Shown piece after piece: positions 33,063 to 44,106 of a stretch of 64,000 nt of DNA. The DNA is from Magallana gigas. Its lineage: Eukaryota. The notes beneath the pieces were generated by a model. It was not told the DNA's origin. It searched no databases and saw nothing but the letters and a program-made list of their open reading frames with translations. Location of the stretch: assembly GCF_963853765.1 (NCBI RefSeq), contig NC_088861.1:32550001-32614000 (forward strand). Reading direction: 5' to 3'. Within the stretch, counting starts at the first letter, position 1. Each line of letters opens with the position of its first letter. The translations under genes and the position numbers were made by a program.

Positions 33063-36000
33063 AATGTTCCCCATGGACATGACACCTTTTCCCCTGTCAC
33101 TGGCGTTGAGTGACTCTGATCCAGACACCCTTAATTGACTCACAGTTGATCTACGTAATCCGCAATCTAATTAAAATTAGACCTTTCATCTCGCTCTCTG
33201 TTACATATGGATACCGCTCGTGAAAGGATCTAACGCAACCCCGTTCAGGTCACGTTCTGGTGACCTTTTGCTCCAACCAATCAGCGTATCGCCTATGAAA
33301 TGTTCGGTGTGACAGTCGGCTGCGTATAAACAAAGATGGCGGCGTCCATGACACCGCGAAAGGTATACAGCTCCACAAACATATGCTGCCTATGTGGATT
33401 TTCTTTTATAGTAAAAGAAATTGACGAGAACGGCAAGTCCACTGTTAAGAAGTTTTCGAAATTAAAACTCCGTTTAAGCGAAGAGAAGCGTGCTGCAATC
33501 AATCAAGTGACAACAATACCCGACAATACTGACGGTGTGTGCACGAAATGTTTCTCAAAAGTTGAAAAAATAATTAAGTACCGGAAGGAGATTTCAGCTA
33601 TAATATCTCAGTTCGAAGAGAATATGAAACGGAATATGTCTAAGACACCTGGGTCTAGGAAGAAAAGGCTACTCAGATCTCCGCAGGTAACAACCACTCG
33701 TTTAAAAAAACTTTTATTCACGAAAAAGCGATTGATGATACTCATGGTAAATTCCATTTTTTGTTCCATTTAAGATATATTCATTAAATTAAAGTTTTGT
33801 AAAACATTGAATTTTCTGGTTAAGGAAGTTGTAAGCATTTTATACTTTAAATAAACATGATAAATGTGCATTTACCAAATTCTTACATTATTCAATGTAC
33901 TTTGACAGGCAACTGTACCTGTGAGAAGCCAAGTCAGGTCATATTTGTGAAGGGATTGTACCGACCCATGAGATTCACACTCTATCTACATGTCAACACA
34001 GACCCTCGTTGCCAAAGCCTGAAGGTATAACAATGCAATTTATTTCTTTATTTTGTTTTCCAGATCAGGAAAGGTAAAATGTAAATTAATGTAATTGAGT
34101 AATTGTTTTTACATTTTTAATTGATTTGGCATTAGTGTCATCTTCATCGAAAGATTATTTTCATGATGATTCTGAACGGATCATTTAATTGCCATTTTAA
34201 GAATTGAGAAGTGAAAGTCTTAATTTAATGTAGTGAGTTACCATCAACAATTTTAAAAGACAGAAAGGCACTTTCGTTGGATAAGATATACTCGTAAGTT
34301 TCAAAAATGGTAGAATGACTTTAAAAAAAGATATGAAATAACTTTTCAGAGTCGTCATACATCTCTCTGAGGGAACTTCCGGGCATTGTACAGGTAAAAT
34401 GCTTTGCAAGTAATATATATAATATGCTTTAATAAAGAAGAAATGTATGTCTCTAAATGAGTGATGGATAAATCATTTATAGCAGTTAAGTGAATCCTAA
34501 AAGGTAGATAAATAAAGCTTTTAAGTTTAATAGATACAAATGCAAGCAATGTTCTTTCATTTTTTTAGATTCAAGACCCACATTCCACAGGGATGTTAGC
34601 TGACAAAAGCTTGAATGCTGGTATGTATTAGGTACTTGTACAAACATAAAACTTTCAGATGAACTCATATTTCAATTCTGCACATTCCCAAGGTGTATCT
34701 AAAAGAAAGTTCTTTAGAGTTACATTATTTGATAACTTATTATGTGTGTTTGTTGGATAGTATCAGCTATAGGGCCATCTGATCAAGAAACCAAAACTGC
34801 AAGAAGATCTCTTGGCTTTAGCAAAGTTATTGAAAATGCGAACAAGGATATGAGTACTTCTGAATATGTAGACGAAGTCAAGGTGCCAAATGTTTGCATA
34901 AAGTTGGTTTTGAGTCGGTTTACATATTTTTGGTTTTTGTTTTTTGTTAACAAATGTTATTTTCAGATTTTACATGACTTATTTTTAACATTGAATTTGA
35001 TTTAGTTTAAATTTAGTAGTAAGAAGAGATTACATGTCTGTTAAGGATTATAAATGATGGTAGCATTTAACCATTTGGCAATCTATCTCTGAATTGGCTT
35101 CATAACTTATAGTGAATTTTACAACCATTTTCTGCCTTACGCAGTATTGATATTTTATGACAAACATATGATTTAAAGTTAAATTGTGTTGCTCCTATTT
35201 AGATCTGCATATAGTTTGTTTCCATTGAGAAACTGTTATGACTTATCAATCAAATTTTACATTTGCATATACCGGAATATGTACAGTTACATGTATGTTT
35301 TATGTTTTTGTTTTATGTTTTGTTAATAACTTTCTTTGACTGGTATCTTGTATTTAAAAGGGCTATTATGATCTGAAGTTTACAAGTATGAATAGAATTA
35401 ACTGCACATATACCAAGCAGAATCTTAAGAAAGAAGGCCAATTTTATTAAACAGTTTGTGATATTCAGGTGCATAGCTAGAATGGAAATGAAGTGTACGC
35501 ATGAAATGGCCGGGGATTCTGGGGATTTACCAAAATTTTAAGTCATTTTCCTGCAAAAGATATCATGCTTCATCCCTTTTCTCTAGCAAATGCGTAGCAC
35601 TGAAAAAAGTTTCCCAGTTTGAGATGGCTCAACAAAGGAGTCATTTAAATATTAGTATTGTTTATAATGGTTTATCATCAGAAAATACTTTTTTTTAAAA
35701 ATTTATTAAATTGTTCTATAGTGCATGTGGTATTGTAAATGTTTCAAGGAGACCTTAAATCTTAATAAGATGTGATTTTTAAATTCTCCAAGTTGGTAAT
35801 ATCAGTAAAAAAAGATATTAATATACTATTTGTTTTGTTTAATATAATTTTTAGTTTTATCTCGGAGGAAATGTATTAAAAATCTTGTATAGTCGTCCAC
35901 GACATAATCTTTTTATCAACTTTTTAAAAACAAAAGAATATTAGATATTTTTGCAACCCTTAGCTCATTTACTCATCAAATTTATGGTCTGGATAAACAG

Positions 36001-36164
36001 TATAACACGAATTAACTGCTGCACTATATATCTAGGCTAGTATGTTTTCTCTTAAATTTTGGACGATTTTTTGGCAATGATTCAATAAAAGACTTTTAAT
36101 TTGATTGCACATACTTGCTGAATATAGATTTAAAATGAACAAATTCTTTTTACTCCAAATAATA

Positions 36165-36168
<4 letters not shown>

Positions 36169-36240
<72 letters not shown>
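36169..36240. repeat. (CT)n microsatellite
   Basis: Direct reading. Confidence 0.97.
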
Positions 36241-40926: not shown

Positions 40927-41496
40927 CACCCAAAGACTTTTGACACAAGATGTAATCCAGTATTTCAAAATGGCAACAAAAGCATTTGAATATATGTTTA
41001 CATTTATTAAAAACTATAAAGAAATCTGATTTATGACAAAATAAGATTGGAACATTTCCATTATCAAAGTTGAAAAACGATTACATATCTGAAAAATTCT
41101 TTACTTTCAATGTATCGATGAAAGTAAAAACTCAAAAGAGGCTTAGACATTTAAAAATTGTCTGTTGTTCCTTTCACAGCTAAATCATGTTTACCTATTC
41201 ACATTTAATGCATTGTCAAAGTACATGTATCATGTGAACAATCCAATACAGTTAAGTCCACAGCAACAGATCATACAACATATGTATAAATGCATGAGTG
41301 AGTTAATAACACAAATGAAGTCAATTAAGACTGCATGGAACAACCAAGAAAGTTTATATTTTACAAATAAAAAAATAAATGCATGCATTCTACACAAAAG
41401 TAACATATATATGAAGTAACAAAATGGCCAAATACATTATCATAAATACCCGTATCATCTAATGAAGCATAAAAACCATCATCTGATAATTCATCT

Positions 41497-43624
41497 TCAT
41501 TGTAATACAAAAGTATCAGTGTCACTATCTTCCACCACATCCTCACATTTAACACATTCATTAATCTCAAGTAAGGTTTCTAGCTCGATCTTTTCACACC
41601 TACCACAATTGCACTTAACCTCACATATATCGCAACAAACATGAGACTCATTTTGAATACAGTTGGTTAACTCTTCTAAAAAATGAGACAATAGATTCCT
41701 CCTTCTACAATCTTTATTATCTAAAAATTGTCTAACATCTTTGTCAACATGTCTTTTATGTTGGGAACTATACAAAATGATGGCAGATAATGGCTGACCA
41801 TCTCTCCCAACCCTACCTAATTCTTGTACAAAGTCAACAATGCTTGTAGGAGGACAATACAAAATAACTGAATGACAATATGCAATATCAATACCCATTC
41901 CTAATGCTGATGTAGCGACAATTATATTCACTTCACTATCAGACCTTGAAAGTTGTTCTATAATAAATTTCTTTTTTTCAGATGGAGTCTCAGAGTGTAA
42001 CATTTCTATTTGACTTTTGTTATCAAACTCAGAATGCAAATAATGAAACACATTAGCAACATCTGCAATGGATTTGCAATATATAAAATTTTTTGGTAAA
42101 ATAATTGAATTAGCAGCAGATACTAACCAATACATGACAGATGCAATATCATGATCTATCTTCTTAACACATAATTTGATGTTAGGTTTGTCCGGAGACA
42201 CCGAAACAAAGTTAATATCACTTGACTTCAGGCACATTACTTTCATGACCCTGTTCTTGATCTGTGTAGTGCATGTAGCACTCAACGCCAAAACGGTGGC
42301 AGATGGGTGTAAGGTGCGAAATTCCCCAACATGGCGAAACCATCTTCGGAAAACAACTTCTTCTTCATCGGTTTCATCACCACCCCTAATTTAAAGAAAA
42401 GCTATTAACAGCAATAATTCAATCATTTACTGTAACAGTTATGAAGATATGAAAGAGTTAAAAAGTTTCCTTATGAAACTATAATTTTTGTATCATCAAG
42501 ATCTATTTGAATGTAACAAGCATGTTTAACTACATTTATAGGTATACACGCATTATGGTGCCTAAAGAATAGGTGCCCCATTAATTTTGTTTATGTTAAA
42601 TGATTAACACAATTTACCATGGTAAGATATTATAGTTCTGGCTACAACTTAGGCATGGAAAAAAGAGCGTGATGAAATGTCTAATTTTTGTAAAAGTGTA
42701 GAGTTGTAAAAACAGGGAGTGGAAAATAATTACCACGTAGCAATTGTATGAAATTCATCTATAACCAGGAGGCCAACATTCAGCTTCTGTATATGAGAAC
42801 GCCACTGGAGATCTCCAACAAGCGCTTCAGGCGAGGCAAAGATGATGTCAACGTCCCCTGCTTTTATTCTCTCATCTCCCTCTGCGGAATTACCTATTCA
42901 ATAATTTATATTCAATAAGTCAAATATGTCAAATGTGTAAAAATACTACAACAACCTGTAAATCATTGCAGTGCGATTGTGAAATAAGTCAACGCTGTAC
43001 ATACCAAAGTATGATAGCATTTTCAGCATGTCAATGTAAAGATTTGTTACAGAGTGGGTAGAATTACCCCATGATCAGTTTTTAAAGATCTGCTATAATC
43101 AGCAAGTTTCTTCAAATTTGACAAAGAAGGACTAAAACGTTTTATTAAGTAGATGTATTGTTTTTAATGAAAAAAGTAGGGGCGAAATCTAAATTCACAT
43201 ACTTTTTGGCACGCAAATATCATATGTACACCATCTTAAAACTCTTGATGTACCGTCTATTGCTATCGCAAATCTACATGCTTAAATTTATGTTTGTTTT
43301 GTTTTTATAATCGGCTAATGAATGAAATCTCTCTTAAATACCTTTGTACTCTACTATGAGGCCTGCAACACCGTTCAGACGGTTGACTTGATCCTCCATC
43401 AAAGCCACAAGAGGACAGCAAACTACCACCTTCGGCGTCTCTTCGCGTTCACCAAGTCGCTCTCTCATCGCAGGAATGAACATCTGGTAGGGAAGAGACT
43501 TCCCATATCCAGTAGGAAGGACAGCTAACGTATGTCGCTTACCAAGAATCGAGTCTAGTATCTCTTTCTGCTTATCTTTTAATTCTACTTTAAACAACTG
43601 AACCACTTTCTCGTACGACGCCAT
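41497..43624 (-). CDS. RecQ-like SF2 helicase of AcademH-B (3 exons: 43624-43342, 42893-42734, 42385-41497; 443 aa)
   Basis: GT-AG joins keep the frame. Motifs LPTGYGKS, PLVALMEDQ, IDEFH, LSAT, ATSALGMGID, QELGRVGRDG, and an RQC-like CRR...CCDIC. The acidic tail may be frameshifted. Confidence 0.88.
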
Positions 43625-44106
43625 TTTGGATTGATATATCGAACTGGATAAAGAAACAAGCATTTTCATTGGTCATTTTTTTATTAAGTAAGGTCATGAC
43701 ACGGGGTCACCAGAACGTGACCTGAACGGGGTTGCGTTAGATCCTTTCACGAGCGGTATCCATATATAACAGAGAGCGAGATGAAAGGTCTAATTTTAAT
43801 TACATTGCGTAATCCCTTAATTGAAGTAACTCTCTATATTTACTTTTCTATTATTCTCTATTGTTAAAAATGTTTTGTTATCTATATGTAATTGATGGCC
43901 ATGTTTAATTATACTCATAACAATCAGAAATTACTTTATTTATTATCATTTTTGACGACTTGTTGTTTTGTATGATGCCACAGTTAACATTTCCCGTGCT
44001 TTCTGGTCGGCGCGACCACGCTGCGAGGGTGACTTTTCAATTCCCACTAGAGCTATAATGAGTTCTTTAGTTTAATTTATAATCTTTTTTTTTGTGTCCG
44101 GTTTTT

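What the first reader, a model, noticed from the sequence alone, without database searches (positions are those of the whole stretch)
33154..43816. Complete helicase-carrying AcademH transposon with long TIRs and a 9-bp TSD
Seen: 103-bp TIRs (2 mismatches), CA...TG ends, TSD CGTAATCCG/CGTAATCCC, a + strand multi-exon transposase with an N-terminal C4 and an internal C2H2-like finger, and a convergent RecQ-like helicase. Known: AcademH is a described but poorly characterised Academ lineage with an SF2 RecQ-related helicase and 9-10-bp TSDs; its mechanism is unknown. Whether this family is new cannot be decided here. It is the best-defined two-gene system in the window.
Basis: partly seen in the sequence, partly recalled or inferred. 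Interest (0 to 1): 0.72.

Follow-up and report, generated by a model that had tools for sequence, protein, structure and literature searches.

The report
Broken helicase-carrying Academ transposon in oyster
This is a real, sharply bounded copy of a known kind of jumping gene (AcademH, which carries a RecQ-like helicase beside its transposase) in a Pacific-oyster-type genome, but its transposase gene is broken in ten places, so it is an ordinary dead copy and not a working element.

Summary
The element spans 33163-43807, with 103-bp inverted ends (2 mismatches) and CA...TG tips. It is flanked by CGTAATCCG/CGTAATCCC. Six paralogous "empty" copies of the host repeat carry that 9-mer once, which proves a 9-bp target duplication. 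Twelve miniature siblings show 9- or 10-bp duplications.

The + strand gene is a six-exon ZAD-like + DUF6589 + C2H2 protein. A 57%-identical full-length relative folds (pLDDT 89) as an RNase-H-type DDE transposase, closest to the P element, Hermes and IS256. The convergent - strand gene is a three-exon RecQ-family helicase core.

In this genome, 66 of 91 DUF6589 loci have such a convergent helicase. Three foreign contigs and a second locus in this window do too.

"Complete" is true only of the ends. The transposase has ten lesions: two stop codons, five frameshifting indels, two dead splice donors and a nested 777-bp MITE. The helicase has lost its acidic tail to a 2-nt deletion. The only close sibling (chromosome 1) is truncated and also broken, and the two copies differ at dN/dS about 1.

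The AcademH reading is supported, but identity with Repbase Academ could not be tested. This scan had already found AcademH elsewhere in this genome. Interest is low.

The parts
33154..33162 (.). Left copy of the 9-bp target-site duplication (CGTAATCCG)
   Evidence: Paralogous empty sites carry the 9-mer once.
33163..33265 (+). Left terminal inverted repeat, 103 bp, starts CAATCT
   Evidence: At least 59 matches in the genome.
33336..33686 (+). Transposase exon 1. Starts with ATG and holds a ZAD-like CxxC...CxxC finger and a KKR-rich stretch. Donor GT at 33687.
   Evidence: Weak zf-AD hit. Conserved in L037/L038. ZAD+DUF6589 occur in one protein in Pinctada and Branchiostoma. Splice site.
36583..37028 (+). 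Transposase exon 2, broken by TAA at 36817-36819 and by a 25-nt deletion after 36881
   Evidence: The C1 copy reads AAA and keeps the 25 nt. L037-L039 have one open frame here.
37267..38509 (+). Transposase exon 3, holding the GDNWD motif. It has a 2-nt deletion at 37312 and is split by a nested MITE. Donor GT at 38510.
   Evidence: RNA contig joint 38509/38738.
37395..38171 (.). Nested 777-bp non-autonomous transposon (TIR CTGTAGACGTA, TA duplication) inserted in exon 3
   Evidence: Absent from the C1 copy. At least 45 copies in the genome, up to 98% identical. Sequence.
38738..38866 (+). Transposase exon 4. Its splice donor is mutated GT>AA at 38867-38868.
   Evidence: C1 has GT. RNA contigs of sibling copies splice here.
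38963..39093 (+). Transposase exon 5, holding the GGDRLT and EDWH motifs. It has a 1-nt deletion at 38971, and its donor is mutated GT>GA at 39095.
   Evidence: RNA contigs read T at 39095.
39370..40571 (+). Transposase exon 6, holding the C-terminal half of DUF6589, the C2H2 finger and the LDEYLEMLN motif. Broken by a 10-bp tandem duplication at 39425-39434, TAA at 40256-40258 and a 25-nt insertion at 40404-40428.
40717..40930 (.). Fragment of an unrelated high-copy repeat in the spacer between the two genes. It is shared with the C1 copy.
   Evidence: High RNA depth from other copies.
41497..42385 (-). Helicase exon 3, holding motifs III-VI and the Cys-rich RecQ zinc module. A 2-nt deletion at 41511 shifts the frame off the conserved acidic tail, which is still readable at 41364-41510.
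42734..42893 (-). Helicase exon 2 (motif II, DEFH)
43342..43624 (-). Helicase exon 1 (ATG, motif I GYGKS)
43705..43807 (-). Right terminal inverted repeat, 103 bp
43808..43816 (.). Right copy of the target-site duplication (CGTAATCCC; the last base changed after insertion)

Best explanation
This is a dead but structurally whole copy of a helicase-carrying Academ-type (AcademH) cut-and-paste DNA transposon in a Crassostrea gigas-type genome.

The intact form of the family carries two genes. One is a transposase of about 900 aa, made of a ZAD-like zinc finger, an RNase-H-fold DDE core (Pfam DUF6589) and a C2H2 finger inserted in that core. The other is a convergent helicase of about 450-490 aa, with a RecQ-type core and zinc module.

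Shown here:
- The element inserted into a copy of another repeat and duplicated exactly 9 bp.
- Its ends have mobilised many 110-680-bp miniature derivatives, which have 9- or 10-bp duplications.
- The two-gene convergent module is the rule for DUF6589 loci in this genome.

Inferred:
- The transposase binds the long TIRs, cuts at the CA/TG tips and joins them to target DNA cut with a 9-10-nt stagger.
- The catalytic residues are the D of GDNWD, the D of GGDRLT and the E of LDEYLEMLN.
- The helicase assists by unwinding DNA at the ends or the target, or during gap repair. Its role is unknown in the field.

This particular copy cannot move by itself. Its transposase has ten inactivating lesions, and its helicase has lost its tail. 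It and its only close sibling have drifted neutrally since they arose.
For: Ends and TSD.

Empty sites.

Sibling TSDs: seven of 9 bp (one imperfect) and five of 10 bp in 12 miniature copies.

Pfam domains: DUF6589, C2H2, DEAD, Helicase_C.

Helicase family: the best solved relatives are all RecQ family (WRN 8e-17, E. coli RecQ 6e-13, RECQ1, BLM, RECQ5), and the match extends into the zinc subdomain. The helicase is colinear with 450-475-aa bivalve proteins named RecQ-like or WRN-like.

Transposase fold: the AF2 model of the 790-aa relative P0286 has pLDDT 89.2 and pTM 0.86. The best structural neighbours are P element transposase (Z 8.7, 366 aligned), Hermes (Z 7.8), ISCth4/IS256 (Z 6.9), RAG1 and Transib. 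By Foldseek, ISCth4 has probability 0.97 and Hermes 0.90.

Convergent module: 66 of 91 DUF6589 loci in the genome, with none on the same strand. It is also seen in L037, L038 and L039 from other samples, and at window 4084-6621.

Lesions.

Neutral decay: 2.76% substitutions, uniform over exons and introns, with dN/dS about 1.

Literature: AcademH gives 9-10-bp TSDs against 3-4 bp for AcademX (PMC10045372, citing Kojima 2020). Academ is abundant in bivalves (PMC10294476).
Against: No direct comparison with a named Academ/AcademH transposase was possible. Repbase is not available, Kojima 2020 and Yuan & Wessler 2011 are not held, and the stored part of the bivalve TE library holds no oyster Academ entry.

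No DUF6589-XPG fusion was found. Such a fusion would have tied DUF6589 to the AcademX branch. The genome has only 5 XPG_I hits, none near a DUF6589 locus.

The structural Z-scores are middling (below 9) for a 790-residue model.

The RNA reads are only 95-99% alike, so they come from sibling copies. The read-supported helicase junction (42741|42385) lies 7 nt from the canonical donor and is out of frame.
Confidence: 0.88

Rival explanations
1. A Mutator-like element (MULE) that captured a host RecQ helicase. Long TIRs and 9-10-bp TSDs are also the hallmark of MuDR/MULE.
For: 103-bp TIRs and 9-10-bp TSDs. IS256/ISCth4, the prokaryotic kin of Mutator, is among the structural neighbours.
Against: Exon scans and ten full-length relatives gave no MULE, Transposase_mut, DBD_Tnp_Mut or SWIM hit, only DUF6589. 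The helicase is not a one-off capture: it sits convergent to DUF6589 at 66 of 91 loci and in foreign contigs. P element and Hermes score above ISCth4.
Confidence: 0.05
2. An intact, autonomous and currently active copy, as the first reader's word 'complete' implies.
For: Both ends and both genes are present, and the TIRs are 98% alike. Related transcripts exist. The miniature siblings are 96-99% like the TIR.
Against: There are ten lesions in the transposase, including a nested 777-bp MITE, two stop codons and two dead splice donors. The helicase has a C-terminal frameshift. All RNA reads and contigs differ from this copy by 1-5%.
Confidence: 0.02
3. The helicase of this copy is kept by selection (domesticated or serving in trans) while the transposase decays.
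For: The helicase core is open over about 440 codons, whereas the transposase has ten lesions.
Against: dN/dS is 1.27 for helicase exon 3 between this copy and the C1 copy, and divergence is the same as in introns. This copy has three indel differences from C1 within the helicase. Two are in frame. The third removes the conserved acidic tail. An open frame of this length is expected by chance at about 1.4% decay per copy.
Confidence: 0.04

Closest known systems
AcademH lineage of the Academ superfamily (Kojima 2020, Mob DNA 11:15; cited in PMC10045372 and PMC10799480)
   Same: A DDE-type transposase plus a separate SF2 RecQ-related helicase between TIRs. TSDs of 9 or 10 bp. Found in animals; relatives here are in bivalves, amphioxus, hemichordates and cnidarians.
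   Different: Nothing tested differs. This copy is a pseudogene. Sequence identity to a named AcademH family was not testable.
AcademX lineage (transposase fused to an XPG nuclease, 3-4-bp TSD)
   Same: Presumably the same transposase superfamily.
   Different: No XPG domain here or next to any DUF6589 locus of the genome. The TSD is 9-10 bp, not 3-4.
MuDR/Mutator-like elements
   Same: Long TIRs, 9-10-bp TSDs, and a DDE core with an inserted helical domain.
   Different: No MULE-family sequence match. A helicase is a constant partner gene.
P element and hAT (Hermes) transposases
   Same: Best structural neighbours of the DUF6589 core: an RNase H fold interrupted by a helical insertion. An ExxH (EDWH) motif sits after strand 5, where P, hAT, MuDR and Kolobok carry C/DxxH (PMC9587614 for the motif; its position was read).
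   Different: 8-bp TSDs in P and hAT. No GTP-binding or BED/dimerisation domains. Sequence identity only 11-13%.
Cellular RecQ helicases (WRN, RecQ, RECQ1, BLM)
   Same: Motifs I-VI and the four-cysteine zinc module.
   Different: Only about 450 aa: no RQC winged helix, HRDC or exonuclease domain. It has an acidic YDEFSDD-like tail instead.

Membership tests
AcademH | Target-site duplications of 9 or 10 bp | tested here: met
   This copy has a 9-bp TSD, proven by six paralogous empty sites. Twelve miniature siblings have 9 bp (7) or 10 bp (5).
AcademH | Encodes an SF2 (RecQ-related) helicase in addition to the transposase | tested here: met
   DEAD + Helicase_C + RecQ_Zn_bind. The best PDB relatives are all RecQ family. 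A convergent partner is present at 66 of 91 DUF6589 loci.
AcademH | Transposase homologous to named Academ transposases (Repbase) | not testable with these tools
   Repbase is absent and the founding papers are not held. Indirect evidence only: Pfam DUF6589, the taxon range, and the abundance of Academ in bivalves (PMC10294476).
AcademH | Terminal inverted repeats bounding both genes | tested here: met
   103-bp TIRs. The same TIRs bound the miniature copies.
DDE/RNase-H-fold cut-and-paste transposases | RNase H-like core with three conserved acidic residues | tested here: met
   The AF2 model of the relative P0286 has pLDDT 89. Neighbours are P element, Hermes, ISCth4, RAG1, Transib and Mos1. 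The GDNxD and GGDxLT motifs recur in the consensus, and D667/E671 are present in 90% or more of 57 sequences. Catalysis itself was not tested.
AcademX | XPG nuclease domain fused to the transposase; 3-4-bp TSD | tested here: not met
   No XPG domain in ten long relatives. None of the five XPG_I hits in the genome lies near a DUF6589 locus. The TSD is 9-10 bp.
MuDR/MULE | MULE/Transposase_mut catalytic domain | tested here: not met
   No such Pfam hit at E<=0.1 in the exons or at E<=0.001 in full-length relatives.
RecQ helicase family | SF2 motifs I-VI plus the RecQ zinc-binding subdomain | tested here: met
   GYGKS, DEFH, SAT, ATSALGMGID and QELGRVGRDG, then CRR...CCDxCxxKCxCxxC. PDB matches reach query residue 263. 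The RQC and HRDC domains are absent.

The most novel reading that the evidence does not exclude
Pfam DUF6589, still listed as 'unknown function' and recently floated as a possible virulence or epigenetic factor of rust fungi (bioRxiv 10.1101/2025.10.24.684071), is simply the catalytic core of AcademH transposases. It would be an RNase-H-fold DDE enzyme of the P/hAT/Mutator structural class, with a C2H2 finger inserted in the core, that travels with a convergent RecQ-like helicase.

A more speculative rider: an autonomous master of this family still segregates in oyster populations. Intact near-identical ORFs such as P0001 occur in other runs. That master would drive the young miniature copies.
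Probability: 0.8. Interest if true: 0.3.

Novelty: new member of a known kind. Interest (0 to 1): 0.2.

Why it matters
It matters little as a discovery. AcademH is a described lineage, Academ elements are known to be abundant in bivalves, and this scan had already found an intact AcademH copy in the same genome.

The by-products are useful in three ways:
1. A clean, empty-site-proven 9-bp duplication for an AcademH family, with a set of young miniature derivatives.
2. Genome-wide evidence that DUF6589 and a convergent RecQ-like helicase form one module. This gives an orphan Pfam family a function and warns against reading DUF6589 expansions as host or virulence genes.
3. A confident structural model placing the Academ-type core beside the P element, hAT and IS256 transposases.

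The open question for the field remains what the helicase does and why it goes with 9-10-bp instead of 3-4-bp duplications. This dead copy does not make that question more testable than an intact one would.

Tried and rejected
1. Kojima 2020 and Yuan & Wessler 2011 could not be read.

2. A paper search on 'Academ' as a word start drowned in 'academic'. A search for 'PF20231' gave only unrelated papers.

3. The bivalve TE library in the supplement of PMC10294476 is cut when stored and holds no oyster Academ entry. A 20-mer of the TIR was not found in it.

4. I looked for an XPG fusion to tie DUF6589 to AcademX:
- Ten long relatives had none.
- The profile word search returned only amphioxus DUF6589 proteins.
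- No XPG_I hit in the genome lies near a DUF6589 locus.

5. tblastx against the divergent same-genome relative at C9:10.14 Mb was too noisy to define exons. Foreign loci L037-L039 worked instead.

6. I considered whether this copy's helicase and the C1 copy's transposase could complement each other. I rejected this because C1's exon 3 has three stops and has lost the exon-4 acceptor.

7. Selection on the helicase was rejected by dN/dS about 1.

They were searched one by one, and the natural full-length relative P0286 was folded instead.

The 128 N in the window were not touched.
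Full report
**1. Observation**

The repeat finder gives one long inverted pair, 33161-33265 and 43705-43809, 98% complementary. Reading the ends puts the element at 33163-43807 (10,645 bp). It has 103-bp TIRs that differ at two positions, tips 5'-CAATCT...ACATTG-3', and flanks CGTAATCCG (33154-33162) and CGTAATCCC (43808-43816).

The window is G000:C9:32550001-32614000 of a 564-Mb assembly with ten large chromosomes. The 90% cluster of the nearest transposase fragment holds a Crassostrea gigas RefSeq protein.

**2. The duplication is real and is 9 bp**

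Both flanks belong to a dispersed host repeat. The last 113 nt of the left flank and the first 105 nt of the right flank hit the same places in the genome, overlapping there by the length of the duplication.

Six such places were fetched (L044-L049). All run gaplessly across the junction at 93-95% identity over 161-167 nt and carry one copy of aGTAATCCG. These are paralogous empty sites. The insertion duplicated 9 bp, and the G>C at the end of the right copy is a later change.

**3. Siblings**

The TIR has at least 59 matches in the genome. Most are head-to-head pairs that form 110-160-bp miniature elements made of little more than the two TIR halves. There are also copies of 536 and 682 bp.

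In 12 of them the flanks could be read:
- Seven have 9-bp duplications, one of them imperfect.
- Five have 10-bp duplications, two of them with one mismatch.

The family therefore makes 9-10-bp TSDs, and it has moved non-autonomous copies that are 96-99% like this TIR.

Only one other long copy exists, at C1:28888855-28897554. It lacks everything beyond window position 42932, which means helicase exon 1 and the right TIR.

**4. Genes**

Exons were delimited in three ways: by conservation with three foreign loci that carry 57-60%-identical homologues (L037, L038, L039), by the 790-aa transcript-derived relative P0286, and by splice sites.

The transposase (+ strand) has six exons:

| Exon | Coordinates | Content |
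|---|---|---|
| E1 | 33336-33686 | CxxC...CxxC finger, weak zf-AD hit |
| E2 | 36583-37028 | |
| E3 | 37267-38509 | GDNWD motif |
| E4 | 38738-38866 | |
| E5 | 38963-39093 | GGDRLT and EDWH motifs |
| E6 | 39370-40571 | C2H2 finger, LDEYLEMLN motif |

Pfam gives DUF6589 (E 3.7e-20) and a weak C2H2 hit. In 31 homologues the C, C, H, H of the finger and several acidic residues are invariant.

The helicase (- strand) has three exons with canonical sites: 43624-43342, 42893-42734 and 42385-41500. It is colinear with 450-475-aa bivalve proteins that NCBI names RecQ-like, WRN-like or RecS. It has motifs I-VI and a four-cysteine zinc module. Its best solved relatives are all RecQ family (WRN 8e-17, E. 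coli RecQ 6e-13, RECQ1, BLM, RECQ5).

**5. This copy is broken**

Polarity was judged against the C1 copy and the outgroup homologues. By that measure the window copy's transposase has ten lesions:
1. TAA at 36817-36819.
2. A 25-nt deletion after 36881.
3. A 2-nt deletion at 37312.
4. A 777-bp MITE inserted in exon 3 (TIR CTGTAGACGTA, TA duplication, at least 45 copies in the genome).
5. The exon-4 donor changed from GT to AA.
6. A 1-nt deletion at 38971, just after the GGD motif.
7. The exon-5 donor changed from GT to GA.
8. A 10-bp tandem duplication at 39425-39434.
9. TAA at 40256-40258, where C1 and P0001 read HSK.
10. A 25-nt insertion at 40404-40428.

The helicase core is open. However, a 2-nt deletion at 41511 shifts the frame off a conserved acidic tail that is still readable at 41364-41510.

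The C1 copy is also dead. Its helicase has frameshifts and a 102-nt deletion and is truncated. Its transposase exon 3 holds three stops, and the exon-4 acceptor is deleted.

The two copies differ by 2.76% in substitutions, evenly over exons, introns and spacer, with dN/dS about 1 in every exon tested, including helicase exon 3 (1.27). Both are decaying neutrally, so the open helicase core is chance, not selection.

**6. Expression**

RNA runs from oysters hold related sequence at 95-99% identity. Contigs support the exon-3/4 junction (38509/38738) and splicing at the exon-4 and exon-5 borders of sibling copies. Those copies read T at 39095, where this copy has lost the donor.

Six stranded reads from five starts join 42741 to 42385 on the helicase strand. 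That junction lies 7 nt from the canonical donor and is out of frame, and I cannot explain it. The reads show that the family is transcribed, not that this copy is.

**7. What the transposase is**

A profile search of 1.84 billion representatives found 1835 relatives. The long ones come from bivalves, amphioxus, hemichordates and cnidarians. They carry DUF6589 alone or with an N-terminal ZAD, as here.

P0286 was folded with 57 aligned sequences and gave pLDDT 89.2 and pTM 0.86. The model shows a beta1-beta2-beta3-alpha-beta4-alpha-beta5 core followed by a long helical insertion and a final helix.

Foldseek found no match at E<=0.001, but it ranks ISCth4 (probability 0.97) and Hermes (0.90) highest by probability. 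VIA-align gives P element transposase at Z 8.7 (366 residues aligned), Hermes 7.8, ISCth4 6.9, and RAG1, Transib and Mos1 at 5-6. The scores are middling, but the top ten are all DDE transposases.

The core is therefore an RNase-H-fold DDE enzyme of the class with an inserted helical domain. The catalytic triad I propose is inference: the D of GDNWD, the D of GGDRLT and the E of LDEYLEMLN.

**8. The two genes form one module**

In this genome DUF6589 hits group into 91 loci. Of these, 66 have a relative of this helicase within 10 kb downstream on the opposite strand, and none has one on the same strand. The helicase list is a lower bound.

The same convergent pair is found in three contigs from other samples and at 4084-6621 of this window.

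**9. Comparison with what is known**

AcademH is described as Academ transposons that encode a helicase and make 9- or 10-bp TSDs, against 3-4 bp for the XPG-carrying AcademX (PMC10045372, citing Kojima 2020). Academ is reported as strongly amplified in bivalves, with 100 curated consensus sequences (PMC10294476).

Every feature I could test is met. The one I could not test is homology to a named Academ transposase. The MULE alternative, which shares the TSD length and long TIRs, fails on the catalytic-domain family and on the constant helicase partner.

Earlier notes of this scan (s1-375636, s1-375753, s1-399318) report AcademH elements elsewhere in this genome. They agree with this reading, but I did not test them.

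**10. Verdict**

This is an ordinary dead copy of a known kind of element.

The modest added value is the empty-site proof of the 9-bp duplication, the genome-wide pairing of DUF6589 with a RecQ-like helicase, and the structural placement of the DUF6589 core among DDE transposases.

Noticed in passing
window 4084-4836 (+) and 6235-6621 (-): A second, degraded DUF6589 ORF (E 4.4e-11) with a convergent Helicase_C fragment about 1.4 kb downstream. This is another AcademH-type remnant in the same window.
   Followed up: partly
window 37395-38171: A 777-bp non-autonomous transposon with TIR CTGTAGACGTA and a TA duplication. It has at least 45 copies in the genome, some 97-98% identical, so it was recently active. 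It is heavily represented in RNA contigs at its 3' end (depth over 1000 at 38153).
   Followed up: partly
window 33050-33162 and 43809-43912: The element sits in a copy of a dispersed repeat of about 220 bp or more that occurs at dozens of loci, some in tandem (for example C6:53.10-53.12 Mb). The right flank continues into further repeat units, and then into the Crypton noted by s1-361686 at 44107-46279.
   Followed up: partly
window 42741|42385 (- strand): Six stranded RNA reads join these positions. The junction lies 7 nt upstream of the canonical GT donor (42733-42732), has non-canonical ends and would break the helicase frame. It may come from a sibling copy with a different donor.
   Followed up: no
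G000:C4:24116256-24117560, C1:8520748-8522052, C5:20096603-20097907 and others: Several DUF6589 loci have uninterrupted single-exon ORFs of 598-664 aa with a convergent helicase nearby. These are other AcademH-type families that look intact and, unlike this family, intronless.
   Followed up: no
bioRxiv 10.1101/2025.10.24.684071: A stripe-rust pan-genome paper lists DUF6589 as enriched in pathogenic fungi and as a possible virulence or epigenetic factor. The evidence here suggests these are transposase genes.
   Followed up: no
window 36140-36250: A (GA)n microsatellite in transposase intron 1. Its length differs between this copy and the C1 copy.
   Followed up: no
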